From: Octopus sinensis
Lineage: Eukaryota
Direction of reading: 5' to 3'
Assembly: GCF_006345805.1 (NCBI RefSeq)
Contig: NC_043000.1
Coordinates: 16,616,001-16,680,000 of the forward strand
Length of the DNA stretch: 64,000 nt
The position numbers and the translations under genes were made by a program. Shown in pieces: positions 341 through 54,290 of the stretch (within the stretch, counting starts at the first letter, position 1; each line of letters begins with the position of its first letter). The notes beneath the pieces are model-generated. The model saw only the letters and a program-made list of their open reading frames with translations. It was not told the DNA's origin and ran no database searches.

Positions 341-403
341 CTGATTCTTCCCCATGGCCTTCAGAAGACACTGTGGTGGTGGTCGTGGTGGTTGGCTCTT
401 GAC
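341..403 (-). CDS. Internal exon, 63 nt: (G)QEPTTTTTTTVSSEGHGEES(G)
   Basis: Acceptor cttctctactagcag| and donor |gtaatg; phase 1-1; open in the frame of the upstream exon. Confidence 0.7.
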
Positions 404-1205
404 CTGCTAGTAGAGAAGGGTTTTGTCAATACACCGACTTAAACAGAAATACACAGACGAATGAAAACCCCGAAAAACAGACACCAAACAACAGTAGGGA
501 GGTAAAGAATAAAAAGTGATACAATACACACATACACATGTGAAAAGTGATACAGAAATGAAAAATAAATCAATGTGCAATATAAAACTGTTAAAAACAC
601 CCACTGGAAGATCAAAAACTGTTTAGATGACAAGAAGGAAAAAAAGAGGTCAGTTGCTAAAAAAACAAAAACAAATGTACAAAATAGAAACAATCAGTTA
701 TTTAGTTTTAGCAGGCTTTTATGGTGGTATTTAGGAATATATGAGATGAAAAACTTCAAAGACAAAAAACAATTTTCAAAAGAAACCCAGTTCGTTTTTA
801 TTTTAAAAATTGAATCTCAGTTTTAATTTTATGTCTCAAGGTTGAAACTCTGATCAGGAATATTGATCCAATGCTCTATAAATTTCAGTAAATTTAAAAA
901 AAATTATTGTTGGACACCAAATTATTCCTAGATTTTAAAAATCAGAATAATCACTACTAGATTTTAATATAGAACTGAGTTTGTTTTGTTGTTTGCTGTG
1001 ATTTTTTTTTTTTTTTTGAAGAAAAGGAAATGGAAAGAGACAGACAGAAAGAGCTTGAGAAGAGAGAACCACACACCACTATCTTTTAAATTAATGTAAT
1101 CCTTTTGACATTGTACCTCTGACAAATTGACCTGCATAGAAGGGCTGTTATTGTGGCAATACTGATCTCTATGGAGAACCTGGTACTGTTTATATATAAA
1201 GATGC

Positions 1206-1438
1206 GGTGGCGAGCTGGCAGAAACGTTAGCCCACCGGGTGAAATGCGTAGCCGTATTTCGTCTGTCGTTGCGTTCTGAGTTCAAATTCCGTCGAGGTCG
1301 ACTTTGCCTTTCATCCTTTCGGGGTTGATAAATTAGGTACCAGTTACACACTGGGGTCGATGTAATCGACTTAATCCCTTTGTCTGTCCTTGTTTGTCCC
1401 CTCTGTGTTTAGTCCCTTGTGGGTAGTAAAGAAATATA
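1206..1438 (+). mobile_element. tRNA-derived SINE, family B (about 235 bp)
   Basis: Close match to the copies at 59049 and 62740. Core GCCTTTCATCCTTTCGGGG. 15-bp TSD TATATATAAAGATGC at 1191-1205 and 1439-1453. Confidence 0.85.
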
Positions 1439-1829
1439 TATATATAAAGATGCTGTTATTGTGTAGATACAGACCTGTTACTGAGATACTAATCCCTACA
1501 CAAGGGGCTGCTATTGATACAATGTAACGAAGTATGATGATAGTAGGAATAAGACCGTTGCATAAATCAAGGGAAATGCAACATGAATAGTTCAAAATAT
1601 CCATAAACAGTTATAGGTCTACATCAAGTGGCAGCTGCCACTACTAGACAAAATGTGCCTTGTACTTTGTGAACAATACACAAATGCTCAACCCTAGCAA
1701 GACACAGGAGTATCCAAGTTGTCAGGTCACTGGATAGTCAGTTGGGTATATAAGTGAGATAAATAGATTTATGTCCAAAGAGCTGCATACCTCCCTGGAC
1801 AAAAATCTATATATGTAACTCACACATAT

Positions 1830-2290
1830 CATCATAATCATTTTAATGCCCACTTTTCCATACATGCATGGGTCAGGCAGAATTTGTAGATGCATATTTT
1901 TCTAAAGCTGCATGCTCTTTCCGTTGCCAACCCTCACCCATTTCTAAGCAAGGTAATATTTCCCACAGCTAGACAAATTTTCTACAGAAGACTGCAAACG
2001 ACCAATATCACTCGTATGAAGGCGATGCTTGCTTACACCCATAACATGATGTCATGACAAGGACAAACAGCAGCACCATTTAACATACGTTTTTCCATGC
2101 TGGCATGGGTTGGATGGTTTGACCGAAAACTGGTAAGCTGGGGGAGCTGCACCAGTTTCCAATCTGATTTGGCATGATTTCTACAGCTGGATGCCCTTCC
2201 TAACACCAGCATCAGCTACAACTATGATATCACTTGGCTTGACAGGTCTTCTCAAGCATGGCATATCACCAAAGGTCTCGGTCACTGACT
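1830..2290 (-). mobile_element. Two decayed copies of repeat family D (retroposon 3' end with GAT tail)
   Basis: Reverse complement resembles 63700-63900 (ttaggaagggcatccagc...ccatgctagcatggaaaa). Confidence 0.55.
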
Positions 2291-3429
2291 CCATGCAGCA
2301 TCACACATGTATATGATTGGCTTTTCCTGTTTACCAATTGCACTCACAAAGCTTCAGTTGGTCCAGAGCTGTAGTAGAAGACACATGCCAAAAGTGCTGC
2401 ACAGAAAGACTGAACCAGAGGCCATATGGTTGGGAAGCTAGCTTCTTAACTACTCAGCCATGTCCTTCTCTAATATGTCCTACAGAGAAAGGGTAAGAAT
2501 AATTCATTTGCCCATCACTCTACCAATTTTAGCTTAGCCACTGCCCTTAAATAATTGATAGTTACTATACAGTTGATATTTGCATTGATAGAAGAAGCCA
2601 TAACATCAAGCTTTTGACAGTGAAATGTGTGTGCATATTCAGGTGTTTCAACATAAAGCATCAGATCAAGACAAGAAGGAAACTGGATCCAAGAACACCA
2701 CAAAAAAAAAAAACAACATAGAAAGTAAACGAAAAAATTTTAAAATAAGATTTGAAAAAAACTGTAAAAAATGAAAACAGAAATTAAAAATAAATTATTC
2801 AGTGAAAAAGAAAAAAGGCAATGACAACACTCAATATTCCAGGCACAAAGCAAGCAATGGATAATAATAATAATAATAATTTTAATAATGATTTCTAAAA
2901 ATCAAGACCAATATTTCTCAGTTAAAGGCTCAATTTCAATTTTGTCTTTTCTTTTCAACCCAAGGATATTACTGGTACTTGCTAATTCTGAAGGGATTAA
3001 AGTAACAGATTGAATAAAAACTGATCTTGAAAATTGATATTTGAAATGAGAAGAAATGTGATCTAACGACATTTGTGCCTTTCTATGAAACCATTAGAAT
3101 GATTTTTTCACCTGTCCTTCGACTAATAAACAGAATAAAATATTATAGGTCCCCTAAATTTTACCTTTTCAACTGAATTGGGTTTGCACCCCTGTAGCAA
3201 ATTTTGTTCCTGCACTTATGATTACACAGAGGATTTTTCATTGATTCAAACTTCTTTTTATGCATGTGTGTATTTCTTTATCTTATGTAGTATATCTAGA
3301 ATTATAATTATTCAATGAATACTTTTATAATAGAAGAGTAAGATATAATTTGGGGAGGATTTTGTTACTATTTCTAATAGGGCAAATGATTACACAGAGG
3401 TTTATTTTGTATTGAGGTAAGTTAGTAGG

Positions 3430-4424: not shown

Positions 4425-4549
4425 TATATATATAATATATTATATATATAATATATATAATATATTATAAATAATATATATATATAATATATATAAAATA
4501 ATATATATAAATAATATATATATATATATATAAATAATATATATATATA

Positions 4550-4587
<38 letters not shown>

Positions 4588-4780: not shown

Positions 4781-4831
4781 CACATATGTTTGTAATTGTC
4801 ATTCAAATGTGGTTTTCTCTAATCATCTAAC

Positions 4832-5002
4832 CTTTGTCAACAGCAGCAGCAGCTTGTTGTTGTTGCTGTTGCATTTTTTGCTGATGCTTTTCGATAAAGC
4901 GGAGATAATCATCGCTTTCTTCATCATCATCGTCATGATGGGGGCTGCTGCTGTCCTCGGTGATAGTTATGGTGGGTGTTTTCCCCGCCACAGCGAGACG
5001 GG
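4832..5002 (-). CDS. Internal exon, 171 nt: (A)RLAVAGKTPTITITEDSSSPHHDDDDEESDDYLRFIEKHQQKMQQQQQQAAAAVDK(G)
   Basis: Strong acceptor ttttgttgttactttcag| and donor |gttaga; GC-richer island; phase 1-1; lies within ORF 4827..5207. Confidence 0.85.
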
Positions 5003-5350: not shown

Positions 5351-5382
<32 letters not shown>

Positions 5383-6708: not shown

Positions 6709-6767
<59 letters not shown>

Positions 6768-11783: not shown

Positions 11784-14700
11784 CTTGTGAAGATGTTTTT
11801 TTCTTCTTACGATTTGATTTACGAGATTTCCGTGAAGACTTTTTTGTTGTGACCTCTTTAGTGGGGTCAGATAGAACGGTCGGTGTGCGAGAGTCTTGGA
11901 ATTGGAGAGTATCTTGGTCTGAAGTTGACTGAGATGATATGTGAGTGGAATATGAAATGTCCCCTTGCTGAGTAGTGCTACTTTGAGAGCGACTACTAGA
12001 AGGTGCATCGGGTTGTTGGGTGGAAAGATGGAGGATGGATACGTCACCCTGTTGATGACCAGAGAGCTCATCAGATTTTGGAAAACTGTGTGTGATGTGT
12101 GTTTGTTCAATGTTATAGCTACTACTTTCACCTGATTGACCAGTATGTTCAAAAGTATACTTGCATTCAGTGCTGCTGCTCTGTTGAAGACCTTGTCCAA
12201 AGCTATATTCAGTGCCCTGCTGTTCAGTACCTTGAACTAACTTGGACTGACCTTGTCCAGTGGAAAGGTCATCTTTTTGCGATTGAGCTCCCTCAGAGGT
12301 GGGGTTCTTTTGTACATGTGTCTGGACGACAGAGACTATTCCACCTTCCTCTTGAAGGTGACCAGCATCACTGTCAGACGTAAGGACAGTGGTTAGAATC
12401 TGACCACCAGTGGATACTTTATTACAATGAATGTCAACAGTTTTGTCACCAACTTGATTACCATTTTCACCAGTTTGAGAATCAGCATGACGTAAATCAA
12501 CTTGATGAGACTGAAGAGGAATATGTTGTTGAACATCTTGACCAGTGGACAGATGAAAACAATGTAGAGGAACATGTTTGGACACAGATGGGTCAGCAGT
12601 TTGAGGTGCAAGGAAAATTTGTTCGGTGACAGGGGGGTTAATATAAAAGCAGTATTGATCATCCCTATACTGGTCACTATGTTCGAGGTCATACTGACAT
12701 TCAAAGACATTACCTTGGTCAGTATGTCTGAGGCTATACTCGCATTCTTTGTTATCTCTATGTTGGTCAATATATTTGATGCTATATTGACATTGAAAGT
12801 CATCTTGTCGTTGTTCACTGTCTTTGAGGCCGTACCGACATTCACGGTCATCTCCATGTTGGTCAGTATGTTTGAGGCCATATTCATGGTCATCTCCATG
12901 CTGGTCACTATGTTTAAGGCCATACCGACATTCATGGTCATCTCCATGTTGGTCAGTATGTTTAAGGCCATATCGACATTCATGGTCATCTCCATGCTGG
13001 TCAGTATGTTTAAGGCCATATCGACATTCATGGTCATCTCCATGCTGGTCAGTATGTTTAAGGCCATATCGACATTCATGGTCATCTCCATGCTGGTCAG
13101 TATGTTTAAGGCCATATCGACATTCATGGTCATCTCCATGCTGGTCAGTATGTTTAAGGCCATATCGACATTCATGGTCATCTCCATGCTGGTCAGTATG
13201 TTTAAGGCCATATCGACATTCATGGTCATCTCCATGCTGGTCAGTATGTTTAAGGCCATATCGACATTCATGGTCATCTCCATGTTGGTCACTATGTTTA
13301 AGGCCATATCGACATTCATGGTCATCTCCATGTTGGTCACTATGTTTAAGGCCATATCGACATTCATGGTCATCTCCATGCTGGTCAGTATGTTTAAGGC
13401 CATATCGACATTCATGGTCATCTCCATGCTGGTCAGTATGTTTGAGGCCATATCGACATTCATGATCATCTCCATGTTGGTCAGTATGTTTGAGGCCATA
13501 CCGACATTCATGGTCATCTCTATGTTGACCAGTATTTTGAACTGACTTGAACTTATCTTGCCCACTGGATAGGTCATCTTTTTTGAGCTGTCCTTGGCAT
13601 GAGGTGACATTGAGATTTTGTACTTGTGCCTGAATGCTAGGGACAGCCCCATCTGAACTGACACTTCCATCAACATTATGATCTTCCTCTTGAAGGTGAC
13701 CAACATCACTGTCAGATGTCAGGACAGTGGTTAGAATCTGACCACCAGCAGATACTTTATCACAATGAACTCCAACAATTTTGTTAGTATCTTGATTACC
13801 ATCTTCAGTTCGAGAATCATCATGATGTAATTCAACTTGATGAGCCTGAAGAGGAAGATGTTGATGAACATCTTGACCAGTGGACAGATGAAAACTATGT
13901 AGAGGTATATGTTTGTTCGTGGATAGGTCAGTAGTTTCATGTGCAAGGGAAATTTTTTCGGTTATAGGGGGGTCAACATAATAGCAGTACTGATCGGCAG
14001 GAAAATTGTCAACTAAAGGATCTTGATCAACAGATAAGTCAATGGGCTTGCAACTATCTTGACCGGTGGAGAGGTCAACGTGATGCAGGCGTGAACCACC
14101 TGTTGGGGTGTCACTATGGAAGGAAGGCCGATTAGTTGAAAGACCATCACGATGATCCTCTTGGCTAGTAGGAAGATCAGCATGAACTGGTAACCCACCA
14201 ATGTATGTATTGCCTTTATTGGATGGTAAAGCAAAACCACGTGGATCAACACTGGAACTACCTTTATCTGTGAGCTGCTCAATACTTGACAGCTCTTGGC
14301 CTTCACCAATGTGAATATCTGCCTTTTTAAGTTGATCTCGACTTGTGGGAACTGGAATACCTTCACCAGTATACTGTTCCTGAGCAAGTGGAAATTTCAG
14401 GTCAGAGGATGTGACAGGAGACTGCATATCTACAATTTGAGAGGACATATGATGTATTCCTGGAGTAGAAACCACAGTCACACTACGAATGCCTTCAGGA
14501 GCAGGTATTACAACATTGTTTTCAACATCCTGACCAGCACGTAAACCAATGTTACCTTGTACATCCTGATGCGTAGGTTGATCAATATCGCTTGTAGGTC
14601 TCAGCTGACTATGTTGGTCAACTCTGTGTAGTTGTTCAAGATTACTTGGAACATCCACATGATAAACACCTGCACCAATGGACAGTCTATTACCATGATC

Positions 14701-17700
14701 ATCTTGAGCAGTGAATGGAGAAATAGGCTGGCCATATTGGTCAGTGGGAATATGAACAGCATCAGTATCTTGAGTGGATATTTTATTATATTGAACACCT
14801 GGAGCAATGGGCTGTTTGATTATATGATCATCTTGTTTAGTAGGCAATTGGCCTTGACTAGTAGGAAGATCAGGTGTTGTATGATATTCTCCAATAGACT
14901 GTCCAATAATTTCTGGGGTATCATGACGTGTAGTGACGTCAGCATTGCCTGCTGGTTTATCGACAGGCTGAGAGCCACCTTGAGAAGAAGGTTTGGCAGC
15001 ACGATGTAGCTGTTCTAGATCCACTGGAAGATCAACATGATAAACACCAAATGGACCACTAGGTTTGGCCACATCAATACTTTGCAGTTGTTTGCTGGCT
15101 GGCAGATCATGATACTGAAAATTATCTTTAGTTTTGGACATTTGTACCTGTGGAATATCTTGAGGAGAGAGTATTTCAATATTATAATCTTGATCAGGTA
15201 GAAGTTGTCGACCATGAAGAAGAGTGACATCACCTGTTTCAGTAGTATCAGCTGACTGACCAACAGGATACTCTCTGTCAACATAGTGCAAAGTTCCCGG
15301 AATAACAGGATGGTCAACAGGATAAACACTTCCACCAACAGAGCGTCTGATATTTTGATCAGTAGGAATAGGGACTTGCTGACCAATGTAACCAACAGAT
15401 GGCTCAACAACATGAATGTCTTTACGAGAGAGTGGCTCTACAGGTAGCTGGTGATCTTGACCTGGAAAAACATAAACAGGTGTGGTACGATACTCTCCAA
15501 TAGTGTGTTCAATACCTTCTGGGAAGTCTTGAGTACTTCGTATGTCAGCTTGAGTAAGTGATTTGTCAATATCTTGAGAGCTGACTGGACGGGAAGGTGG
15601 GTCAACACGATGTAATTGCTCAAGATCCACTGGAAGATCAACATGGTAGACACCAAATGAACCAGTAGGTTTGGTAACTTTAGTATCTGGCAGCACTTCA
15701 CCAGTTGGTACATCATAATATTCATCATGATCTTCAGGTTTCCTCATTTCTACGTGTGGAATATCTGGAGCAGACAGCTTTCCAATGTTATAATCTTGAT
15801 CAGATGGAATTTGTTGACTATATGAAATGTTGGTTTCAACTGGTTCAATGCTATCAACTGATTGATTGATAGGAAACTCTCCACTTTGAAAGGAAGGTTT
15901 CTCAACACGGTGCAAAGTTTCCAGAGCAACAGGTTGGTCTACATGATATACACCTCCACCAACAGAGCGTCTGACATTCCGATCAGTAGGAATAGGGACT
16001 TGCTGATGAATTTGATCAACAGATGACTCAACTACAGGAATGTCTTTACGAGAGAGTGGCTCTACAGGTAGCTGGTGATCTTGACCTGGAACAATATCAA
16101 CAGGTGTGGTACGATATTCTCCAATAGTGTGTACAATACCTTCTGGGAAGTCTTGAGTAGTTGGGATGTCAGCTTGAGTAAGTGATTTGTCAATATCTTG
16201 AGAGCTGACTGGACGAGAAGGTGGGTCAACACGACGTAATTGTTCAAGATCCATTGGAAGATCAACATGGTAGACACCAAATGGACCAGTAGGTTTGGTA
16301 ACTTTACTATCTGGCAGCACTTCACCAGTTGGTACATCATAATATTCATCATGATCTTCAGGTTTCCTCATTTCTACGTGTGGAATATCTGGAGCAGACA
16401 GCTTTCCAATGTTATAATCTTGATCAGATGGAATTTGTTGACTATACGAAATGTTGGTTTCAACTGGTTCAATGCTATCAACTGATTGATTGATAGGATA
16501 CTCTCCACTTTGAAAGGAAGGTTTCTCAACACGGTGCAAAGTTTCCAGAGCAACAGGCTGGTCTACATGATATACACCTCCACCAACCGAGCGTCTGACA
16601 TTTTGATCAGTAGGAATAGGGACTTGCTGATGAATTTGATCAACAGATGACTCAACTACAGGAATGTCTTTACGAGAGAGTGGCTCAACAGGTAGATCGT
16701 GATCTTGACCTGGGACAACATCAACAGGTGTGGTACGATATTCTCCAATAGTGTGTTCAATACCTTCTGGGAAGTCTTGAGTAGTTGGGATGTCAGCTTG
16801 AGTAAGTGATTTGTCAATATCTTGAGAGCTGACCGGACGAGAAGGTGGGTCAACACGATGTAATTGTTCAAGATCCACTGGAAGATCAACATGGTAGACA
16901 CCGAATGGACCAGTAGGTTTGGTAACTTTAGTATCTGGCAGCACTTCACCAGTTGGTACATCATAATATTCATCATGATCTTCAGGTTTCCTCATTTCTA
17001 CGTGTGGAATATCTGGAGCAGACAGCTTTCCAATGTTATAATCTTGATCAGATGGAATTTGTTGACTATACGCAATGTTGGCATCAACTGGTTCAATGCT
17101 ATCAACTGATTGATCAATAGGATACTCTCCACTTTGAAAGGAAGGTTTCTCAACACGGTGCAAAGTTTCCAGAGCAACAGGCTGGTCTACATGATATACA
17201 CCTCCACCAACCGAGCGTCTGACATTCCGATCAGTAGGAATAGGGACTTGCTGATGAATTTGATCAACAGATGACTCAACTACTGGAATGTCTTTACGAG
17301 AGAGTGGCTCAACAGGTAGATCGTGATCTTGACCTGGGACAACATCAACAGGTGTGGTACGATATTCTCCAATAGTGTGTTCAATACCTTCTGGGAAGTC
17401 TTGAGTAGTTGGGATGTCAGCTTGAGTAAGTGATTTGTCAATATCTTGAGAGCTGACTGGACGAGAAGGTGGGTCAACACGATGTAATTGCTCAAGATCC
17501 ACTGGAAGATCAACATGGTAGACACCAAATGGACCAGTAGGTTTGGTAACTTTAGTATCTGGCAGCACTTCACCAGCTGGTACATCATAATATTCATCAT
17601 GATCTTCAGGTTTCCTCATTTCTACATATGGAATATCTGGAGCAGACAGCTTTCCAATGTTATAGTCTTGATCAGATGGAATTTGTTGACTATACGAAAT

Positions 17701-36820: not shown

Positions 36821-37165
36821 AAAGAGAGAGAGAGAGACTGAAATTAATACTGAAGATGTAACCCACATAATAAGCAGTTATCCAAAAAATGTTTTCATGA
36901 TACTATTGATGTCAGATGCATGATGTAGTGGCCAAATATTTTGTACAAAATATCAGAACATTGATGCTATGATTAAAATCCTACTTGAGCAAGATATTTA
37001 ATTACCTAAATTCTGTAGCAGTACTTCTAAAGCACTTGCAAAAATGAGTTATTTTTCTACATTTATGGATATGAATATTAGCAAGTGGCTTGGGTGTTCT
37101 TTGTAATGTTTTATGGTTTCTGTCAATGGTTTGGCGAGGTACTACAGCTTAAAATCCATAATTAC

Positions 37166-40100
37166 CTTTGCTGACACTTAGACCTTCATGTAGAAACACA
37201 TCTTGATTGGACTTGGCAGCACAGCCACGTAGGATGGACATATATTCTTCTTTGGGTGGAGCTATCTCAAATTCTTGTGTGAACAAATCTGATTCTTCTA
37301 AAGGTATTACTTTGACTTGAGAAGCTGTAGTAGCATCTTTAACATTAACCTTATCACAAAGACATGAGGAAGTTACATCTTCTATAGTGCATGGTGGTAC
37401 TGCAAGTGTCTGAACATCTACCATAGGAATATCACAGATGCTTCCACCAGCTTGACCATCAAGGGCATCAAAACTACAAGACACATCAGTGAAAGAACGG
37501 GCTTTCTGTCCTCTTATAATAGACAGGCTTTCCAATTTGGGTCTTTCAAAAGTTACTTTTTCTTCCACTCTGAATATTTCAAAATCCAACAGAGACAAAG
37601 AACCAACAGAATATGTCAATGGGAAAGTTTGTTTAGGATTTAGCTGCTGCATCACTGCATGACAGTTTTTACCATTCCCAGGTGTTACAGATGACTTGGA
37701 TACCTCTTGCCTAGATGGAATCTGAATAGGTTCATGTTCTAATGATATATCAGAAGATATTTTCTTTAAACAGCCTTTATACCTACTTGAAGAATTCCCA
37801 GATGAGACAGTATCATCAAATGGAAATTTATAACAAAAACGGTTATCCATTTGGGGAATTCTGTGTGAGCATACATTGTCTGAACCCTTTACTGGTCCAC
37901 TTAGTAATTCTTTGGTCTTCAAAGAATTTTCATCCATCATATTTGAGACCATTCCAAGAGAGAAAAACTGGTTAGAAAATGGTTTAGTGAAGTCATAAAG
38001 AATTTGTTTCTTACCGAAGTGATTACTAAGACCAGATCTGGAGGTGCGGGTACCAAAAGGAGGAAAACTTTGGAAAGAGAAAGGAATTTCTTGCAAGCCA
38101 AACCAATTCGGACCACATGGTGAGTTTAGATAAGGCATTTTGTTACTTCTGAAACCTGTATAGCAACTATTATCCAAGATGTTAGAATATGGGGTATCAG
38201 AATCAGACATTTGTGTAACATTACTGGGATATCTTGCCAGACTTGAAGAACGGCTGGAACAATTGTACACATAATTTTCCTTCTGAAGGGGCTTGAATAA
38301 TCTTTCGTTTGTAGAAGCTCCAAATGTTGGGGGATCGTTTTCATACCTAGGGTGCAAATCTAAAGACTGACTGGAGTCATAAGTTCCTGCATTGGTAGAA
38401 CGTCGAGGAAAACTTGTACTTCTGTTCTCAGATTCTAATGTAGACATGCTCTTTGAGAAATCATGGAAATTTTTACGAGTGAAGCTTGGATTATTTAACT
38501 GATGGAAAGTTTTGCTATTCAGACTTTTCTCGTCAGAACTATTAAAAGACATGTGATCACCATCCTCACTGTTATAACTTGGTATTGTTGGACAGTGTTG
38601 GTCAAACATGCATGGGTAATGGTTATGGTTGTTAGACCTGTTAGAATAAGGGTACTGCCTGTCATAACCTTTGAAAGATAAGTTTGATTTAGGGCCACTG
38701 TAGGGGGGAGGGGGTAACATAGGGCCATAATTGTCAATGTTTTGTAGACTTTGTATAGAGTCTTTAGACTGAGAAGGCAATAGGCAGCTATTTTTTGAAT
38801 CAGGCTTCTCTGAGTTGTAACACTTCAAGTGGTCATTCTGGAAATGAGAACCTTTTGACTGTTGATACACCTGGTCACTGTTATGGGCACCCATTTCTAC
38901 AGTCCTGCGGTCAGCATTGTAATCATTGTAACAAGAGCTGCTATATAGTGGAATATTACGTTTGTTCCATAGCATATTATTCTGATCATTAGCGAACTTG
39001 CTAGGAATTGTTTTATCAACATTGAAAGCATTTTGACTAGAAAACCGTTGATTCCTAGCACTTGTTGGGTATATGAAGTAATCACAGTTGGGTATGCCCT
39101 TGTCCTTTGTCTGGCTAAGTCTATGTTGCAGATCAGAAAATAACCCTAAATTATGGTTGCCTACAAACAGACCATCAGTGCCATTTGTGTCACTGTTCCT
39201 CTCATTGGGATCATCATTAATTAGACTTTCAAGTGACAAAACATCACTCTCATCACTATCATCACAACAGCTTCCAGTATTAAACCTTCTGTAGAACATT
39301 GAACCTCTGTTAGGAATAACAGGTGTATGATAGCCCTGAGAGGGCAACATGTTATACATATTTCTAACAGGTAGCTGCTGGTTGTTACACTTTTTAAAGG
39401 AACTCCTTGGTTTGTAAATATTACTATGAAGAAGTGCAGGGTTTTCTTTAAATGACCCAGGTAAGGTTCTGGAACAATAGAAGTCTGGAGCAGTGTCTGT
39501 ATCCAATGCATTATTTTGTGAGGAAAAGACTTCATCATATTCTTCCTCACAGCATGAATCTGCAGACATTTGATCTAAGCTGTATGTATCTGGTGAATGT
39601 CTTTCATAGTCATACATATATTGTGACAAACTATGACAGTCATACGAGTCTGGTGACAGTCTGCAAGAATCATAGGAATCCTGAGACACAGTATTATAGT
39701 CATCTGTATCAGTGATCATTCTACTAGAGTCATATATGTCAGCTGTTGTTCTATGGAGGTTATATCTATTGGCTGTTATTTGATGGGAGTCATATGTATC
39801 AGATATCACACTACACAAGTCATATGTACCAGCTGTCATTGTACCTGAGTTATACATGTCACCTGTCATTGTATGTGAGTCATACATATCACCTGTCATT
39901 GTATCTGAGTCATAAGTATCAGCTGCTATTCTATGAGAGTCATATGCATTAGCTGCCAATCTATGAGAGTTACATGCATCAGCTGTCATTCTACGCAAGT
40001 CACATGTATCAGCTGTCATTCTACGTGAGTCACATGTATCAGCTGTCATTCTGTGTGAGTCACATGTATCAGCTGTCATTCTACGTGAGTCACATGTATC

Positions 40101-42394
40101 AGCTGTCATTCTACGTGAGTCACATGTATCAGCTGTCATTCTACGTGAGTCACATGTATCAGCTGTCATTCTACGTGAGTCACATGTATCAGCTGTCATT
40201 CTACGCGAGTCACATGTATCAGCTGTCATTCTACGCGAGTCACATGTATCAGCTGTCATTCTACGTGAGTCACATGTATCAGCTGTCATTCTACGTGAGT
40301 CGCATGTATCAGCTGTTATTCTATGTGAGTCACACATATCAGCATTCATTCTATAAGAATCACATGTATCAGCTGTCATTCTATGTGAGTCATAGGAATC
40401 AGCTGCCATTCTATGAGAATCATATGAATCGGCTGTCATTCTCTGTGAGTCATATGGATCAGCTGTCGTTCTTCGAGAATCATATGAATCAGCTGTCATT
40501 CTACGAGAGTCATATGGATCAGCTGTCATTCTACGAGAGTCATATGAATCAGCTGTCATTCTACAAGAGTCATATGAATCAGCTGTCATTCTACTAGAGT
40601 CATATGAATCAGCTGTCATTCTACGAGAATCATATGGATCAGCTGTCATTCTACGAGAGTCATATGGATCAGCTGTCATTCTACGAGAGTCATATGGATC
40701 AGCTGTCATTCTACGATAGTCATATGGATCAGCTGTCGTTCTTCGAGAGTCATATGAATCAGCTGTCATTCTACGAGAATCATATGAATCAGCTGTCATT
40801 CTACGAGAGTCATATGGATCAGCTGTCATTCTACGAGAGTCATATGGATCAGCTGTCATTCTACGAGAGTCATATGGATCAGCTGTCATTCTATGAGAGT
40901 CATATGAATCAGCTGTTATTCTACATGAGTCATTTGCATTAGCTGTCATCTTATGTGAGTCATACACATCTGGAGTCATTCTACCAGAGTCATATGTGTC
41001 TGATAGCATTGTGATACTGTCCTGTGAACTAAGGCTCATTCTGATAGAATTCATTTCATTGGTATCATATCTATTGGATGGCATGCTGTCATGCTTGTAC
41101 AAATCAGAAGTCGAGCTATAGCAATCCGAGTCTGGTGACAAAGGCTCAATGTCGTAGGTATCAAGAAATCTCATGCTATCATCCTTATAAATATCCAGTG
41201 AGTTACTGTCATAACTGAATGTGCTTGGAGCATGTTGCACACAACCAGATACCTTTTTATGTGAAGGATCAGAGTTAAAGGTATCTTGAGATACATTGTC
41301 ACAGCTAGTGTCAAGAGATTTCCTCTTTGCATTGAAAGTATCTACAGACTGTCTGTCTATGCCAACTGTTTCCAGAGATCCTCTTTTTAGGTTATATCCA
41401 CCTGAACTCTGTGAGTTTATATTTTGCTCACTTGAGTAGCGTGACTTACTGCCTATGTCATGTGTGTCCATAGAATTTCTGTCCAGGACACACGAGTACT
41501 CAGACATGTTATCAAAGTCATAGGGGTCTTCAGCATTTCTGTTTGAGTAATGCTTGTGAGAAGGCATTCTATTGTAGTCATACATGCCTGGAAGACTCTT
41601 GTGATGGTTGTACATGTGTGGGAAGCTTTTGCCTGTACCTGACATATACCAAGGCATTCCACCATAGTTATATGCATTAGAATACATTGGATGGGGAGGA
41701 AAGGGAAAAATGGGTGGCCTGAAATTGTTCATTTGTTGCGGAGATGGTGCTTTGTAATGAATGCGTGTATCATTGGAACTAGTTTCAATCTCTGGACACT
41801 TCTCTGGAACTAAATTTGTTTCACAGGAGCCTAATACTGGGTCAAGTTGTTCAGCATTGGAACTTTGGATAGCTGGTGTATCAACAGCAACGACAGTAAT
41901 ACAGGAGGACGTGGAACTGTTATCGTAATCATCCGATATGTTTGATATGGAATGGCAGGTCTCCGCATGTGAAACGATTGATTCCTCTTCATGTAAGGAC
42001 TCATCATGAATGTGTGAATTTAGGTTGAAAGGCTTCTCTTTCAAGTTCGAAGACATTGAATATCTGGAATCAATTAGCATGGATTGAGTGGAAGAAAACT
42101 CATCTGTTTCTCTGTGAAAATGCCTCAGTTGTGGGAGATAATTTTGACGGCACACACTGTCAAGTTCCTGAAAATTCTCAGAGAGATAAGAATTTTTCCT
42201 ATCCCTCTGCTGGCATTCATTTCTCCATACCATATCAGATTCTCTTCCTAACAACGGAGTTAAGGAGCGCTCATAATAGATATCTTCTACTTCAACACTC
42301 TGCAATTCAGAGTCATCAGGAATCCGTTGGCTTTCAAAGGAACTGTCAAGTGTGTAGTCATGAGTTATCATTTGGCCATCTGCAATGTCTGCCT
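37166..42394 (-). CDS. Second giant internal exon, 5,229 nt (1,743 codons); Ser/Asp/Tyr-rich low-complexity protein segment
   Basis: Uninterrupted ORF 37149..42410. Acceptor gattttccag|AGGCAGAC and donor AGCAAAG|gtaatt; length divisible by 3; phase 1-1. Confidence 0.92.
39556..40995 (-). repeat. 30-bp coding tandem repeat, 10-aa unit (Y/C)DSRRMTAD(P/S/T), about 48 units including degenerate flanks
   Basis: agctgtcattctacg recurs at 30-bp spacing; visible in the ORF translation. Confidence 0.97.
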
Positions 42395-44389
42395 CTGGAA
42401 AATCACACATTCACAAATAACAGTTAATTTCTATAGGGAACAGTTTTGATTGAAGTCCATCCCACAGAGCTTGGCCATTGACCAAAATGGCAGCATGCAT
42501 TCTTGCAGCCTTGAAGAAATGGAACTCTTTTAAGTTAATGATAAATTAATCTTCAGTTAATTATCATTCATGAGGCCAGGCATCATTATCTTCCTTCTGA
42601 GATTTGTTATGTAACAAGTGGCCAATTGTGAATATCCATGCATTTTAAGTCGCTCATATTGCTTATATCCTTATTTGGTAATTTATCAGTTTTGCATTTT
42701 TCATGCAGTAATATTCACCATTTATTTAGTAGTATTAAAAAATTATTATAATACATATATGTATATATATGTACATATTATATATATACTTGCACATATA
42801 TATACATGTACACACACACACATATATATATATGCATGTGCATTAGACACAGCAGCTTTTGTATTAAATGAGTTTTACCCAAGGTTATGTTATTCAGTTG
42901 TATATGTTTAGTGTTTACCCAGTTATGAATCGGATGTGATTTATGCAAATAAATTGGTTCACACCAAAGCAACAATCAAGGAAGAAAACTTTTTAAGAAT
43001 TAATGGAGTTAAGAAAGATGCACTTTAAATGTTAATAGCTTGAGAGATGACTTTTGATTCGTTAGATTTAGAATGGAAAGAATTAAAAATATGGAAATAT
43101 AAATGCTGTGTGAAACTCAGAGAGTGAGAGATGAGAAGATGTTAGTACATATTGCAAATGGTTAGCGTTCTCTCAATTTTACTTTTTTTTTTTTTTTTTT
43201 GGATTTTGTTTTAAACAGAAGAGGAAAATTTTTAGTGATGAAATATATTAAAGGAAGCCATGTTACAAAGCAGTCCCTTCCCTATGAGATCAATAAATAC
43301 ACAAGAAAATTAGAAACATTAAATACTTTTAAAAATGTAGTTAAATTAAATATCTATCTTTTAACAGTATGTAACAATATGACTAAGTTATTAATCTATG
43401 ATGGATGCTCTTGGTGTAAACCAAAGTAAATATATATAGGTATATATAAATATTTATATATACTATATATATATTACAGAATATATATATATCAAGACAA
43501 TAACTAACAACATCATCAACTTAAACAGGAAGATTTTGCTTTTCGTTCAATTTTTTTTTGCTTTGTTTAATGTTAAGAATAAACAAACATAATATTAAGA
43601 GCAATACAAAAAGGCACATCAAATTTATTCATATTACACATGAAATGACAACATGTATATGGAAGAAGGAAAGACACAAGGAGAAGGAGGAGGAGGAAAA
43701 AATGTCAAAAAAAAAATTGAAACAATAGTAAAGCATGCAGCAATATGAGGCAACATTGCAGTGGAACTTGGCAAAGCTAAGCCAAGCTGCCTAGCAGGAC
43801 ATGAGAAAGTCTAAGAAATAGAAAGAAAGAGACACAGATAGAGAGCAAGTGTGTGTATGTGTATATACATACATACATACATACATAAATATATATATAT
43901 ACACACAAATGTGCAGAGTGTGTGTATTTATGTATACACATATACACCTATATAAATACACATACATGCATACATAAACACACAAACATGTATGTATATG
44001 TATATATATATGTGAGTGTGTGTATATATGTATATATATATATATAATAGATCAAGAGAGATAGAGAATGTGTTACACACGAGGAGAGAAAGGAAAGAGA
44101 GAAATAAAAAAAAAAGAAATAAAAGTGAGGAGTAGGCAGAGAAAAGTTTGTCCATACAATCTTTGAGATTAGTAAAAAGGCAATTTATGCTTGAAACGAT
44201 AAAATATAACAATGTTATATATAAGAACTCTTCAGTCAGGTGAGAATGTCAAACTGATCAAAAAAATTGCACAGGTATTTATCATTTAACTCTCTGGGCT
44301 CCAAATATGTAGCAGTTTATTAGATAATAGAAAGGTAAATAGTAGGAGAGGAAAAAAATGAAAAGATATATATATATATATATATATAC

Positions 44390-47887: not shown

Positions 47888-47931
<44 letters not shown>

Positions 47932-48235: not shown

Positions 48236-48313
48236 CCACTGGGGTGGTCATCTGGAGGCTTTTGGCAAGTTCCATATCAGCTGATCTAGTAGAACTGTCC
48301 TTTGCCTTGAAAA
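48236..48313 (-). CDS. Candidate 78-nt cassette exon (V)FKAKDSSTRSADMELAKSLQMTTPV(G); read-through of the donor ends GNTGLDFGDIADL* at 48195
   Basis: Acceptor gttgctag| and donor |gtaaca; phase 1-1; coding-like island 218 nt from the 48532 exon. Confidence 0.5.
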
Positions 48314-48531: not shown

Positions 48532-48624
48532 CCGTCGCTGATGGCGTGTGTTGGTTACTCTCCATTTCTTCAGAAAGTCGGTCTCTTGCTTGTGCAAGTT
48601 CAGTAGTTCTATGGCTAACAAGCT
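48532..48624 (-). CDS. Internal exon, 93 nt: (E)LVSHRTTELAQARDRLSEEMESNQHTPSAT(G)
   Basis: Strong acceptor ttttattattttcag|, weaker donor |gtgtgt; phase 1-1; open frame. Confidence 0.7.
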
Positions 48625-51215: not shown

Positions 51216-51239
51216 CTGGCTGGACAGAGGGGTCCAGAC
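51216..51239 (-). CDS. Candidate 24-nt microexon (G)LDPSVQP
   Basis: Acceptor caactttttcag| and donor CCAG|gtaaag; phase 1-1; a second donor lies 24 nt downstream. Confidence 0.55.
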
Positions 51240-51621: not shown

Positions 51622-52006
51622 GGAAGCACTCCGTCGGTTACGACGACGAGGGTTCTGGTTGATCCAATCAACGGAACAGCCTGCTCGTGAAATTAACGTG
51701 CAAGTGGCTGAGCACTCCACAGACACGTGTACCCTTAACGTAGTTCTCGGGGATATTCAGCGTGACACAGAGAGTGACAAGGCCGGCCCTTTGAAATACA
51801 GGTACAACAGAAACAGGAAGTAAGAGTGAGAGAAAGTTGTGGTGAAAGAGTACAGCAGGGTTCACCACCATCCCCTGCCGGGAGCCTCGTGGAGCTTTAG
51901 GTGTTTTCACTCAATAAACACTCACAACACCCGGTCTGGGAATCGAAACCGCGATCCTACGACCGCGAGTCTGCTGCCCTAACCACTGGGCCATTGCGCC
52001 TCCACT
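51622..52006 (-). mobile_element. Young tRNA-derived SINE, family A, inverted relative to the other two copies
   Basis: Reverse complement of the 30680 and 61035 copies; 12-bp TSD CGAGATGGTTGT. Confidence 0.92.
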
Positions 52007-52244
52007 CGAGATGGTTGTAGTAAGGAATCGACTCAAGGTAACTAAGATACTTCTGACTGCAATATATATATTTTGTTTCTGGAAAGGAGTAAATCATCAA
52101 ATATATTAGATGACTTATTGCTGTGACAAAGACCAATGAGGGGACTTAATGCTGATGGAAGGACCAATGAGGACTTTAGGGACATTAACTGATCATGTCT
52201 CATTATAGTGACAATCTGACAGATGATAGTATATACTATAATAA

Positions 52245-52660
52245 TAATAATAATTGTGTACAGTGCTCAGGTGCACTACAACTCATCTAAAGTGTATATA
52301 TAATCAGGTGTAGTTTCAGCGGATTTCGGAAAGCATGAGGGCCTTAAAGGATGCAGTATCATGGCAGTCAACAACTGACGCAGGCAGTTTATTCCATGCT
52401 TCAGCAACTCTGAGCGTGAAAAAATGTTTCCGAAAGTCATGGGAGCTGTGTTGTTTTCTGACTTTGTAGGCATGTCCACGTGTGTTAGACACATGGAGAT
52501 CAAAAAGGTGTTCAGTGTTGTTGTTGGTGAGGTGGTTGATAACTTTGTGGGTGTTTACCAAGTCCGTTGCCAGACGCCGGAGCTTCAGTGAATCCATGCC
52601 CAGGGAAACAAGGCGCTCAGAATATGGTAGGTGTCTGATGGAGGGTATGCAAAACACTAA
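52245..52660 (-). mobile_element. 5'-truncated CR1-clade LINE 3' end
   Basis: ORF 52316..52657 reads LPYSERL..LGMDSLKLRRL...TRGHAYK...RKHFF..RV..AWNKLP..VV, the typical CR1 ORF2 C-terminus, followed by a short UTR and a TTA-type tail. Confidence 0.9.
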
Positions 52661-54239
52661 TTGATTAGAGTTACTATAGCGACAATTTTGCCAATAGGGA
52701 GAGAAAATAAAATCTGACTAATAGACGCTATTATAGTGAGAGTCTGGGTAATACTGAATTTCTATGGAGACTCAAGGCCGCCTTATCAACATACTAATAA
52801 CTAACACAAATTTTTCAATATTTTTCTGCCTCACTCTTGATTCTAAAATAAGAAAGTGAATAAATAAAATTTGAAACAAAGCATGAGATATTTTATTGGT
52901 GGGGATCCTGAAATGTTTAACTTTAAATTTAGAACTTTTAAAGGTTAGTTTCAATGTTATGTTAGAATATATTGTTTAGTTTACTTTTGTTTGTGGCTAC
53001 TACTGTTGTTATTATAGCAAACATCATCACCTAGTGATGACAGTTTCACCATGACCATCACCCACAACAAAGTGCAAGAATGAAAAAAGCCAAACTATGT
53101 TATTTCTAAAGCATGTGCAAGGCAAGACCAAAAATAAATTGGTGTTGAAAATAATAAATGTAAAGATAATTATAATAACGAGAAAGAAAAAAAGGTTAAC
53201 TGTAGAAGAATTATAGCAAAAGAGAAAATATTGTCAGTAGTTTTAGAATTGATTTTAAATTGGCCATCTTTATCTTGTATTTTACACTATATTGTTGATT
53301 GATGCATTAAAAATTGATAGGAAAATAAACTCACTAAAAAGTAGTGCAGAATAATAAAATAAGAATACTCAGAAGGATGAGGTTAACAAATTGATAGTCT
53401 GGAATTTTAAATTACTCTCAGATCAGATTATATTTTCAATTTTTGTTCCTTAAGACTTTCATTATTGTATAAAAGACATTTATTTAGTTTAGTAATGAAG
53501 TTTTAAAAAATAAATAAATGTATAAAGATTATGTGCAAGTTGGAATTTACAATTTATCTAGTCAAGGGGTCAAGTTTGAATTTACAATATTTCAAGGGGT
53601 GAGTGGATAAAGTCCACAATAAACAATATAAAGTTTTTCAGTTTTGAATTACAGAAAGATTGTAGCAATCCAATTTCCAGATTCAATAAACACACACATT
53701 ACATATTTTATAATATTATATAGCAGTTGGTTATAAAATATACTATATAGTCTTATATAGTGGAGTTTATAAATGGTTGGTTGAGTAGGAAGCTGAACAT
53801 GTGTTCATAAAAATGCTTGTTGATAAAACACGATACTTACTTTGGAATTTAAAAAATCATATCAAGTGAGACAATCAATAATTAGTTCTAACCGAAGAAT
53901 GGCTTCAAGGGAATGGCATATTAAATCAGTAGTAAATTTAAAGATTAAGCATTTTTTAGTGTATATATAAAAAAAAATTTTCTTAGAAAAGTGAATATAG
54001 GGTGTCTCAGAAAACCTTCACTACTACCATATATATTATAATAATTTTTGTGCCAGTTCTAGCCAAATAATTTTCAAGTACCTTTAGCCACTGTTTCTAG
54101 CCAATTGTCCTTAACTCTAAGTACCAACAAATTAAAAGGTTGCACTTCCCTCGTGAAACCCAATGTCCAAACATACCACATTTCCTCCTACCTTACATAA
54201 GCACCTGTAATTTTGCTAACCTCAGTCCACCATCATTAC

Positions 54240-54290
54240 CTTGAAGTCCTGTTGCTAAGGCACACACAAAACTGGCTTTTTCAGACACAA
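54240..54290 (-). CDS. Candidate internal exon, 51 nt: (V)VSEKASFVCALATGLQ(G)
   Basis: Acceptor cgcttacttgacag| and donor CAAG|gtaatg; phase 1-1; open. Confidence 0.5.

What the first reader, a model, noticed from the sequence alone, without database searches (positions are those of the whole stretch)
341..54290. A modular giant-protein locus: every exon is a symmetric phase-1 cassette, including two giant repeat exons
Seen: exons of 51, 24, 93, 78, 5229, 15777 (repaired), 171 and 63 nt all start and end in phase 1. Any subset can therefore be skipped without a frameshift, so the tail encoded here could range from under 200 aa to over 7,100 aa. Established: Drosophila Ank2-L/XL, C. elegans UNC-44L and vertebrate giant AnkG/AnkB gain neuron-specific giant tails from optional giant exons. 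Inference: this is a cephalopod giant-ankyrin-type system with two independently switchable giant modules, each carrying its own repeat arrays.
Basis: partly seen in the sequence, partly recalled or inferred. Interest (0 to 1): 0.85.

Follow-up and report, generated by a model that had tools for sequence, protein, structure and literature searches.

The report
Octopus giant ankyrin tail exons
This is the tail end of an octopus ankyrin gene, with two enormous repeat-filled exons that can each be left out without breaking the reading frame; this kind of gene is already known in other invertebrates, so it is a new example and not a new principle.

Summary
The gene lies on the minus strand. Exon B is 15,773 nt as assembled and 15,777 nt once four single-base gaps are bridged. 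Both have AG/GT boundaries in phase 1.

The 171-nt exon (5002..4832) and the 63-nt exon (403..341) are confirmed by Octopus bimaculoides RefSeq models (LOC106881226, named "titin-like"). Some of those models skip the 171-nt exon, and they use an alternative acceptor that makes the last exon 63 or 66 nt. The four small upstream exons (51, 24, 93, 78 nt) cannot be told from chance.

The ankyrin identity is well supported. A conserved 136-aa module at the start of exon B lies after the death domain in mollusc ankyrin-2-like proteins, and the octopus ortholog is collinear with their tails to the last residue. The ankyrin core itself is not in the window.

Nothing shows that exon A and exon B share a transcript or are switched independently. 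The tail runs about 5,600 aa beyond the window. The repeat count in exon B is doubtful. Giant ankyrins with two long exons after the death domain are already described in molluscs, so this is a new member of a known kind.

The parts
37166..42394 (-). Giant exon A: 5,229 nt, phase 1-1, 1,742 codons. Lineage-specific polar sequence rich in Ser and Asp.
   Evidence: Splice sites and frame read directly. The ortholog is O. bimaculoides A0A0L8HCD8 (P0067), 83% identical over about 1,190 aa with the frame intact. No Pfam family. Its link to neighbouring exons is inferred only from strand, phase and splice consensus.
39698..40997 (-). 30-nt tandem repeat in exon A, about 43 copies, encoding the decapeptide MTADSYDSRR and variants.
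   Evidence: TRF: period 30, 43.3 copies, 86% matches. Translation. Also present in the O. bimaculoides ortholog.
11784..27556 (-). Giant exon B: 15,773 nt as assembled, 15,777 nt with four single-base gaps bridged; phase 1-1.
   Evidence: The 3' donor is confirmed by O. bimaculoides RefSeq models that run ...KKKKSSSQ|ARLAVAG.... tblastn of P0004 covers the exon from 27533 to 11752.
27018..27420 (-). Conserved module of about 136 aa, the ankyrin post-death-domain tail module, at the 5' end of exon B.
   Evidence: The profile search gave 66 hits. The long hits carry ANK/ZU5/UPA/Death upstream of the module, and the named ones are ankyrin-2-like. tblastn of all hits lands only here. AlphaFold2 gives pLDDT 95.2, all-beta. 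There is no PDB fold match and no Pfam family.
15328..26540 (-). Array of 18 copies of a 624-nt (208-aa) repeat. Each unit has two half-units (100 and 108 aa) that begin with a GVYHVD-P--LE-LHRV motif. Exon B holds 40 such motifs in all.
   Evidence: Spacing 624 nt, with 623/623/622 at the frameshifted copies and in-frame variants of 606 and 627. Motif count. The O. bimaculoides ortholog has only 7 motifs. A single-sequence AlphaFold2 run gave pLDDT 34.7, so the unit is probably disordered.
15952..20940 (-). Two tandem 2.5-kb blocks of four repeat units each (20940..18448 and 18447..15952). They are identical for the first 1,860 nt. Three of the four frameshifts (19079, 18872, 18776) and 7 substitutions lie in the last 630 nt of the first block.
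   Evidence: Copy-by-copy difference matrix: c10=c14, c11=c15, c12~c16, c13~c17. Block alignment. The fourth frameshift, near 24821, is in copy 3.
12716..13535 (-). 48-nt tandem repeat in exon B, about 17 copies, encoding a 16-aa unit rich in His, Asp and Cys (HGDDHECRYGLKHTDQ).
   Evidence: TRF: period 48, 17.2 copies, 91% matches. Translation. Conserved in O. bimaculoides, which has about 19 copies.
4832..5002 (-). 171-nt cassette exon, phase 1-1 (RLAVAGKTPTITITEDSSSPHHDDDDEESDDYLRFIEKHQQ...).
   Evidence: AG/GT-bounded and open. 95-96% identical to P0004 aa 1979-2035. Skipped in O. bimaculoides isoforms X7 and X8. Weak but collinear match to Crassostrea ankyrin-2-like X18 aa 1374-1390.
341..406 (-). 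63-nt exon (403..341), or 66-nt exon (406..341) from a tandem acceptor; phase 1-1 (QEPTTTTTTTVSSEGHGEES).
   Evidence: 100% match in the O. bimaculoides isoforms. X2 and X8 use the 63-nt form and the rest the 66-nt form.
54240..54290 (-). Candidate 51-nt exon (VSEKASFVCALATGLQ). Unverified.
   Evidence: An AG...GT phase-1 open interval with good splice consensus. It is one of 12 such 51-nt candidates in the interval and has no homolog.
48532..48624 (-). Candidate 93-nt exon (LVSHRTTELAQARDRLSEEMESNQHTPSAT). Unverified.
   Evidence: One of 3 such 93-nt candidates. No homolog.
48236..48313 (-). Candidate 78-nt exon (FKAKDSSTRSADMELAKSLQMTTPV). Unverified.
   Evidence: One of 8 such 78-nt candidates. 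No homolog.
51216..51239 (-). Best-looking of 21 possible 24-nt phase-1 exons. Unverified.

Best explanation
The window holds part of the 3' tail-coding region of an Octopus ankyrin gene of the giant, protostome type, in which the long exons lie downstream of the death domain. The gene is on the minus strand.

Exon B began as an ordinary phase 1-1 exon that encodes a conserved, folded beta-rich module of the ankyrin tail. In the octopus lineage it was extended 3' of the module by tandem arrays: 18 copies of a 208-aa unit carrying 40 YHVD motifs, and 17 copies of a 16-aa unit rich in His, Asp and Cys. This produced a 15.8-kb exon.

Exon A (5.2 kb, with about 43 copies of a decapeptide) is a second, unrelated, lineage-specific long exon 9.6 kb upstream.

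Every verified exon here starts and ends in phase 1. Splicing can therefore include or skip any of them and still read on into the conserved downstream tail, which continues for about 5,600 aa beyond the window. Most likely the giant exons add long, mostly disordered, motif-studded spacer segments to a subset of ankyrin isoforms, as in Drosophila Ank2-L/XL.

Shown: the exon boundaries and phases, the ankyrin-tail homology, and skipping of the 171-nt exon in predicted isoforms of a sister species.

Inferred: that exon A belongs to the same transcript, that the giant exons are optional, and that they are used in neurons.

The four frameshifts in exon B are most likely assembly errors.
For: Boundaries and phases: exon boundaries, lengths and phases were read from the sequence.

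Ankyrin identity:
- A profile of the module found 66 proteins.
- Mytilus trossulus LOC134725749 X43 has ANK, ZU5, UPA and Death (1669-1747), then the module (2030-2161).
- Crassostrea virginica ankyrin-2-like X18 has ZU5, UPA and Death (510-586), then the module (1142-1274).
- An Arion vulgaris protein has Death (2-79), then the module (598-729).
- P0041 has UPA and Death (284-361), then the module (1106-1238).
- Saccostrea cucullata ankyrin-2-like X7 carries the module at 2575-2708.
- The octopus ortholog P0004 (XP_014787059.1) aligns collinearly with these tails in four further blocks, including the extreme C-terminus. It also aligns through the 171-nt exon and the next exon.

Splicing:
- O. 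bimaculoides isoforms join exon B to the 171-nt exon and then to the 63/66-nt exon. Isoforms X7 and X8 skip the 171-nt exon.
- The phase 1-1 pattern is conserved elsewhere. In Logan contig L001, all six boundaries of the module exon and its two flanking long exons are phase 1. In ENA locus L002 the module exon is phase 1-1, and that locus is ankyrin-tail collinear.

Exon A is coding: its frame is intact and it is 83% identical across species.

Frameshifts look like errors:
- All four are 1-base deletions, three of them in runs of 2-3 identical bases.
- Three cluster at the end of a perfectly duplicated 2.5-kb block.
- The frame stays open for thousands of codons after each one.

Literature: long exons downstream of the death domain, sometimes two non-homologous ones (Aplysia), with variable repeat arrays, are described for mollusc and other protostome ankyrins (PMC5135030).
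Against: - No ANK, ZU5, UPA or Death exon is in the window. tblastn with mollusc ankyrins hits only the module. The physical link to an ankyrin core is therefore not shown.
- No database model joins exon A to anything. P0067 is a read-through single-ORF call that ends in the intron residues GNYGF.
- A search with the joined upstream exons and the exon A N-terminus found nothing.
- All 15 O. bimaculoides isoforms inspected begin inside exon B. Thirteen begin at its internal ATG (equivalent to window 27533) and two (X18, X19) at a Met further in. All are named titin-like or uncharacterized. A tail-only transcription unit is therefore not excluded.
- No isoform without exon B was seen.
- The amino-acid composition (S+E 14-18%; S, E, T, D, K and P together 45%) falls short of the bias reported for ankyrin long exons (about 25% and more than 55%).
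Confidence: 0.7

Rival explanations
1. The octopus tail is a transcription unit of its own, either a tail-only protein from an internal promoter or a gene split off from ankyrin. It would start at the ATG in exon B (window 27533). Exon A would then not be part of it.
For: All 15 inspected RefSeq isoforms of O. bimaculoides LOC106881226 begin inside exon B. Thirteen begin at this Met and two (X18, X19) at a Met further in. They carry no ankyrin name. No model links upstream exons. From established knowledge, not tested here: vertebrate ankyrin genes do make core-less small isoforms from internal promoters (small ANK1 isoforms).
Against: The Met lies 8 codons after a good phase-1 acceptor, and homology to bivalve ankyrin tails starts upstream of it (tblastn reaches 27506). 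In bivalves, a gastropod and P0041 the same module sits in one protein with the death domain. The O. bimaculoides models date from a fragmented assembly, in which 5'-truncated models are common; that last point is inference.
Confidence: 0.15
2. Exon A is not an ankyrin exon. It is a separate intronless or nested gene (ORF 42410..37149, 1,753 aa with its own ATG and stop) lying in an ankyrin intron.
For: The ORF starts with ATG directly after a stop codon and ends 5 codons after the putative donor. UniProt holds the ortholog as a stand-alone uncharacterized protein. It has no similarity to any ankyrin tail.
Against: It is on the same strand as the ankyrin tail exons. It has a strong acceptor (ttttccag|) and donor (AAAG|gtaatt) in exactly the phase (1-1) shared by all verified exons here and in L001 and L002. 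Lack of homology is normal for ankyrin long exons (PMC5135030). In L001 a long phase-1 exon likewise lies just upstream of the module exon.
Confidence: 0.2
3. The four frameshifts are real, and exon B is a decaying or truncated exon in this genome. Translation would stop at 24783.
For: The assembly as given has four 1-base deletions that break the frame.
Against: All four are deletions, three of them in short homopolymer runs. Three lie within 310 nt at the end of a 2.5-kb block that is otherwise identical to its neighbour. About 13 kb of downstream sequence stays open in the shifted frames. In-frame length variants (-18, +3) occur elsewhere in the array. The O. bimaculoides ortholog is intact.
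Confidence: 0.1

Closest known systems
Mollusc giant ankyrins: Aplysia californica ankyrin with two non-homologous long exons (Jegla et al. 2016, PMC5135030), and RefSeq ankyrin-2-like long isoforms of Saccostrea, Crassostrea and Mytilus
   Same: The long exon or exons lie downstream of the death domain. Two unrelated long exons sit in tandem. The shared tail includes the 136-aa module, a TITITED block and the extreme C-terminus.
   Different: In the octopus gene about 4,200 aa (O. bimaculoides) to about 7,500 aa (this window) separate the module from the next conserved block. In Mytilus about 150 aa do. The 624-nt repeat unit is larger than the 36-228 bp range reported for ankyrin long exons.
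Drosophila Ank2-L / Ank2-XL
   Same: Two non-homologous giant exons after the death domain, one of them built from a large, highly homogeneous tandem array. Proposed role as a spacer or organiser in axons (PMC5135030).
   Different: No sequence homology. Drosophila XL has 93 repeats of 76 aa, while this exon has 18 repeats of 208 aa plus two short-period arrays. Optional and neuronal use is shown in the fly and untested here.
C. elegans UNC-44 giant isoform
   Same: A single very long, repeat-rich exon downstream of the death domain, encoding a Ser/Thr/Glu/Pro-rich tail (PMC5135030 and established knowledge).
   Different: One long exon, not two. Different repeats. No detectable homology.
Vertebrate giant ankyrin-G (480 kDa) and ankyrin-B (440 kDa)
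   Same: One symmetric giant exon switched in by alternative splicing to make neuron-specific giant isoforms.
   Different: The vertebrate giant exon lies between UPA and the death domain, not after it, and lacks repeat arrays (PMC5135030; PMC12798937).
Octopus bimaculoides LOC106881226 ('titin-like' / uncharacterized protein, XP_014787059.1 and at least 14 further isoforms) and A0A0L8HCD8
   Same: Direct orthologs of exon B with the downstream exons, and of exon A. Identity is 83-100%.
   Different: Annotated as separate, non-ankyrin genes. The exon B equivalent is 1,978 aa with 7 YHVD motifs, against 5,258 aa with 40 here.

Membership tests
Ankyrin (ANK1-3 / Ank2 / UNC-44 family) | The same gene encodes the ANK-repeat, ZU5-ZU5-UPA and death-domain core | not testable with these tools
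   No core exon lies in the 64-kb window. tblastn with five mollusc ankyrins hits only the tail module. Sequence upstream of coordinate 64000 is not available.
Ankyrin (ANK1-3 / Ank2 / UNC-44 family) | The tail is homologous and collinear with the post-death-domain tail of bona fide ankyrins | tested here: met
   The module lies after the death domain in the Mytilus, Crassostrea, Arion and P0041 proteins. A Saccostrea protein named ankyrin-2-like also carries it. The O. bimaculoides ortholog aligns in five collinear blocks, up to the last residues of the Saccostrea, Arion and P0041 proteins. The 171-nt exon block is collinear in Crassostrea.
Giant ankyrin (long-exon isoform class, Jegla et al. 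2016) | An exceptionally long in-frame exon (thousands of nt) inside the ankyrin gene | tested here: met
   Exon B is 15.8 kb and carries the ankyrin tail module; its 3' donor is confirmed. Exon A is 5,229 nt and open, but its membership in the gene is inferred.
Giant ankyrin (long-exon isoform class, Jegla et al. 2016) | In protostomes, the long exon lies downstream of the death domain | tested here: met
   Exon B starts with the module, which lies 280-560 aa after the death domain in relatives. This rests on homology and not on the octopus death domain itself.
Giant ankyrin (long-exon isoform class, Jegla et al. 2016) | The long-exon polypeptide is strongly biased: S+E about 25%, and S, E, T, D, K and P together more than 55% | tested here: not met
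   Exon A: S+E 18.1%, six-residue sum 45.0%. Exon B: 14.4% and 45.2%. Both are polar and rich in Asp, Ser and Pro, but below the published figures.
Giant ankyrin (long-exon isoform class, Jegla et al. 2016) | The long exon is optional, so that short and giant isoforms both exist, and is enriched in neurons | not testable with these tools
   No transcript data are available. Symmetric phase 1-1 boundaries make skipping possible. Only skipping of the 171-nt exon is seen, in predicted isoforms.
   Met for exon A, exon B, the 171-nt exon and the 63/66-nt exon, and for homologous exons in L001 and L002. The four small upstream exons fit the pattern only because they were chosen to fit it: 343 such intervals exist by chance.

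The most novel reading that the evidence does not exclude
Octopus ankyrin has two lineage-specific giant exons that are switched independently, giving four tail classes. Alternatively or in addition, the tail is expressed on its own from a start site in exon B. Under this reading the length of the 208-aa YHVD-motif array (7 motifs in O. bimaculoides, 40 here) is a fast-evolving ruler that sets the spacing of the membrane skeleton in octopus axons. The array hangs on a previously undescribed, confidently predicted all-beta tail domain conserved in molluscs and related taxa.
Probability: 0.2. Interest if true: 0.6.

Novelty: new member of a known kind. Interest (0 to 1): 0.4.

Why it matters
- It links an octopus locus that RefSeq calls "titin-like/uncharacterized" to the ankyrin gene. 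This extends to cephalopods the rule that bilaterian ankyrins carry giant exons after the death domain. Cephalopods have the largest invertebrate nervous systems and giant axons.
- It shows how such an exon can arise: tandem-array growth inside an ordinary phase 1-1 exon that encodes a conserved module.
- It gives concrete splice junctions to test for isoform switching.
- It flags a conserved beta-rich tail module, with no Pfam family and no solved counterpart, that may be a binding platform in lophotrochozoan ankyrins.
- It warns that the repeat count and the four frameshifts in this assembly are unreliable.

Tried and rejected
- Pfam on both giant ORFs and on upstream ORFs found nothing meaningful.
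- The first word-indexed protein search with the start of exon B found only one Logan protein. The exhaustive profile search was needed to reach the ankyrins.
- The search with all of exon A found only a fragmentary O. bimaculoides ORF and one weak, unrelated low-complexity hit.
- The search with the joined 51/24/93/78-nt exons and the exon A N-terminus found nothing, even at E <= 10.
- Exact-product look-ups for P0067 and P0013 were not on record, so I could not inspect the genomic neighbourhood in O. bimaculoides or Mytilus.
- tblastn of mollusc ankyrins (death domain, UPA, and the linker between death domain and module) against 42.5-64 kb of the window gave no hit.
- I first read an ORF at 61122..60913 ('DDTVDLMEDWKMLAT') as a possible start of a death domain. 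I dropped this: there is no Pfam hit, and it looks like repeat-derived sequence.
- My recollection that the module resembles a vertebrate ANK2/ANK3 C-terminal motif served only as a lead. It was not tested against vertebrate sequences.
- No tRNA or Rfam features were found.
- Foldseek of the module model against the PDB gave no significant match: best E 0.055, TM 0.27.
- Literature searches for a cephalopod giant ankyrin found no specific paper.

Full report
ORIENTATION. The long open frames are all on the minus strand: 42410..37152, and four abutting frames between 27581 and 11608. These stretches have 38-42% G+C, against 27-36% in most of the AT-rich, microsatellite-laden flanks.

THE TWO GIANT EXONS.
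- Exon A runs from ttttccag|AGGCAGAC at 42394 to CAGCAAAG|gtaattat at 37166. At each end the intron splits a codon after its first base, which is phase 1.
- The 1,742 codons of exon A have no stop.
- Exon B runs from gctttacag|GCCGTTGG at 27556 to TCACAAG|gtaattta at 11784, also phase 1 at both ends. My first count was off by one; the true genomic length is 15,773 nt.

THE 'REPAIR' OF EXON B.
- The frame drops by one base four times along exon B, going 2, 1, 0, 2, 1.
- The core of the exon is 18 tandem copies of a 624-nt unit. The spacings are 624 nt except for 623, 623 and 622, plus two in-frame variants of 606 and 627.
- Aligning the copies shows four single-base deletions against the consensus: CC to C, TT to T, a lone C, and TTT to TT. 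They lie near 24821, 19079, 18872 and 18776.
- With a placeholder base at each site the exon is 15,777 nt, or 5,258 codons, with no stop.

DOUBTS ABOUT THE ARRAY.
- The array is not trustworthy in detail. Copies 10-13 (20940..18448) repeat copies 14-17 (18447..15952).
- These two blocks are identical for the first 1,860 nt. Three of the four frameshifts and 7 substitutions are packed into the last 630 nt of the first block.
- This is what a misjoined or poorly polished long-read assembly of a tandem array looks like. A very recent in-array duplication is the alternative.
- I therefore treat the frameshifts as probable errors and the copy number as uncertain.

SMALL DOWNSTREAM EXONS: CONFIRMED.
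- The exhaustive profile search returned a 7,658-aa protein, P0004. It is XP_014787059.1, 'titin-like isoform X6', from Octopus bimaculoides LOC106881226. Its 19-member cluster includes at least 14 further isoforms of that locus.
- P0004 starts at the Met eight codons into exon B (window 27533) and covers exon B.
- It then continues ...KKKKSSSQ|ARLAVAGKTPTITITED...AAAAVAK|AGQEPTTTTTTTVSSEGHGEES|DDESEGK....
- The first added segment is the 171-nt exon (5002..4832, 95-96% identical). The second is the 63-nt exon (403..341, identical).
- Isoforms X7 and X8 go straight from exon B to the last exon, so in those models the 171-nt exon is a skipped cassette.
- X2 and X8 use the acceptor at 403 (63 nt). 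The others use the tag| acceptor three bases upstream (66 nt, 406..341).
- These are predicted RefSeq models and not cDNAs. They still confirm the boundaries and the frame independently.
- About 5,600 more residues follow in P0004, so the tail runs on past coordinate 1 of the window.

SMALL UPSTREAM EXONS: NOT CONFIRMED.
- Intervals of 51 nt (54290..54240), 93 nt (48624..48532) and 78 nt (48313..48236), and several of 24 nt, are open, AG/GT-bounded and phase 1-1.
- The 11.9 kb between 54290 and exon A holds 343 such intervals of 21-180 nt on the gene strand and 413 on the opposite strand. Twenty-one of those on the gene strand are 24 nt long.
- Their peptides match nothing among the fetched proteins.
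- A database search with the four exons joined to the exon A N-terminus returned nothing, even at E <= 10.
- These four exons may be real, but the sequence alone does not show it.

IDENTITY.
- Pfam finds nothing in either giant exon.
- The first ~180 aa of exon B are conserved. One Logan protein, P0001, carries two copies of the same ~136-aa module.
- A profile of the three copies, searched against 1.84 billion representative proteins, gave 66 hits, 24 of them below 1e-30.
- Long hits carry the ankyrin core upstream of the module:
  - Mytilus trossulus X43 has ANK repeats, ZU5, UPA and Death at 1669-1747, then the module at 2030-2161.
  - Crassostrea virginica ankyrin-2-like X18 has ZU5, UPA and Death at 510-586, then the module at 1142-1274.
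  - An Arion vulgaris protein has Death at 2-79, then the module at 598-729.
  - P0041 has UPA and Death at 284-361, then the module at 1106-1238.
  - P0053 starts with a partial UPA.
- Saccostrea cucullata ankyrin-2-like X7 carries the module at 2575-2708. I did not scan it for domains.
- Beyond the module, P0004 aligns collinearly with Mytilus X43 in three further blocks: 4409-4573 with 2306-2467, 5506-6566 with 2779-3770, and 6766-7423 with 4178-4751.
- The last ~80 residues of P0004 match the C-terminal ends of the Saccostrea (51%), Arion and P0041 proteins.
- The 171-nt exon (TPTITITED) and the exon after the 63-nt exon (SVA-I--MFE) align, collinearly, about 100 aa after the module in Crassostrea X18.
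- The 'titin-like' octopus locus is therefore the post-death-domain tail of ankyrin.
- Not shown: the core itself. No ANK, ZU5, UPA or Death exon, and no exon for the linker between death domain and module, is detectable in the window.

HOW THE GIANT EXON AROSE.
- In Mytilus about 150 aa separate the module from the next conserved block. In O. bimaculoides about 4,200 aa do.
- In the window species the exon B product alone is 5,258 aa, against 1,978 aa in O. bimaculoides. It has 40 YHVD-type motifs against 7.
- In two other loci the module sits in an ordinary exon of about 1.5 kb that is phase 1-1 (L001; L002). L002 is ankyrin-tail collinear with gastropod proteins.
- In L001 the module exon is flanked by two long acidic exons. 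All six boundaries there are phase 1.
- The phase 1-1 pattern is thus an inherited property of this part of the gene. Octopus exon B is that ancestral module exon, enlarged by tandem arrays 3' of the module.

WHAT THE GIANT EXONS ENCODE.
- The module is predicted with very high confidence as long beta-hairpins forming an all-beta structure: pLDDT 95.2 with a 30-sequence alignment. It has no significant PDB match: best E 0.055, TM 0.27.
- The 208-aa repeat is predicted as disordered: single sequence, pLDDT 34.7. This is a weak test. The exception is a small hairpin around VEMRKPEDHDEYYDV.
- Each 208-aa unit has two half-units that start with GVYHVD-P--LE-LHRV.
- Exon B also has 17 copies of a 16-aa unit rich in His, Asp and Cys. 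Exon A has about 43 copies of the decapeptide MTADSYDSRR.
- The composition is polar and rich in Asp, Ser and Pro. It is less extreme than the bias reported for ankyrin long exons: S+E 14-18% against about 25%, and the six-residue sum 45% against more than 55%.

EXON A.
- Exon A is coding. The O. bimaculoides ortholog, A0A0L8HCD8, keeps the frame over about 1,190 aa at 83% identity.
- That entry is only a read-through ORF call. It begins at an internal Met and ends in the intron-encoded GNYGF, so it says nothing about splicing.
- Four observations place exon A in the ankyrin transcript: its strand, its position 9.6 kb upstream of exon B, strong splice consensus in the shared phase, and the parallel of a long phase-1 exon just upstream of the module exon in L001.
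- This is inference. I give it about 0.6-0.7.

COMPARISON WITH WHAT IS KNOWN.
- Jegla et al. (PMC5135030) showed that giant ankyrins with long exons occur in all bilaterian groups examined, molluscs included.
- In protostomes the long exon lies after the death domain.
- Eight of 23 loci have two long exons. In Drosophila, Tribolium and Aplysia the two are not homologous to each other.
- Repeat arrays vary (36-228 bp, 5 to more than 160 copies), and homology between phyla is lost.
- The octopus locus fits this picture. Its own features are the size of exon B, the 624-nt repeat unit (larger than that range), the growth of a giant exon out of a conserved module exon, and the large difference in array length between two Octopus species. 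The short-read O. bimaculoides assembly may have collapsed its array.

VERDICT.
- The ankyrin identity is well supported by homology.
- The regulatory claim of two independently switchable modules is untested.
- The four small upstream exons are unsupported.
- This is a new member of a known kind and is of moderate interest.

Noticed in passing
window 27018-27420 (-): The conserved ~136-aa tail module has no Pfam family. AlphaFold2 predicts it as an all-beta structure of long hairpins with pLDDT 95.2, and it has no significant match among solved structures. It occurs once in octopus and twice in tandem in P0001 and P0002. In one of 15 Saccostrea isoforms the block that contains it is absent.
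   Followed up: partly
window 15952-20940 (-): A four-unit (2.5-kb) block of the 624-nt array is duplicated in tandem. The two copies are 100% identical over 1,860 nt. Three of the four frameshifts and 7 substitutions cluster at the end of the first copy. This is either an assembly artefact or a very recent duplication.
   Followed up: yes
window 341-406 (-): Tandem acceptor (tag|cag|GTC). The O. bimaculoides isoforms use both sites, which adds or drops one alanine (66-nt or 63-nt exon).
   Followed up: yes
window 12716-13535 (-): A 16-aa repeat, HGDDHECRYGLKHTDQ, in about 17 copies. It is conserved in O. bimaculoides with about 19 copies. The His/Cys/Asp content suggests metal binding; this was not tested.
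   Followed up: no
O. bimaculoides proteins P0004, P0069-P0082 and P0067: RefSeq names the ortholog of the tail 'titin-like' or 'uncharacterized LOC106881226'. UniProt holds exon A as a separate uncharacterized protein. Neither is labelled ankyrin. Isoforms X18 and X19 start at a Met inside the repeat region.
   Followed up: partly
L001 1-13684 (Logan SRR26493809) and L002 1-21482 (ENA ERZ26859052): These are two further ankyrin-tail loci from unidentified invertebrates. Each has a two-module exon in phase 1-1 and long acidic exons nearby. The downstream long exon of L001 matches O. bimaculoides tail residues 4061-4271.
   Followed up: partly
window 34724-34990 (+) and 52319-52717 (-): These ORF fragments look like a Tc1/mariner transposase C-terminus (...NIIENLW...) and the tail of a LINE reverse-transcriptase ORF, both lying in introns. 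I recognised them by eye only, and Pfam was negative for the second. Several chance 'exon' candidates fall in the second one.
   Followed up: no
window 17488-18447 (-): In the 208-aa repeat, the only segment with above-baseline AlphaFold2 confidence is a small hairpin around VEMRKPEDHDEYYDVP-GE-LPD. It loosely recalls the EEYE-VL-DGT hairpin start of the module, so the repeat may derive from module sequence. This is speculative.
   Followed up: no
window 1-11000, 43000-48000 and 56000-61000: The introns are dense in TA/TATG-type microsatellites, which read as YIYIYI in translation, and in short interspersed repeats. No tRNA or Rfam family was detected anywhere in the window.
   Followed up: partly
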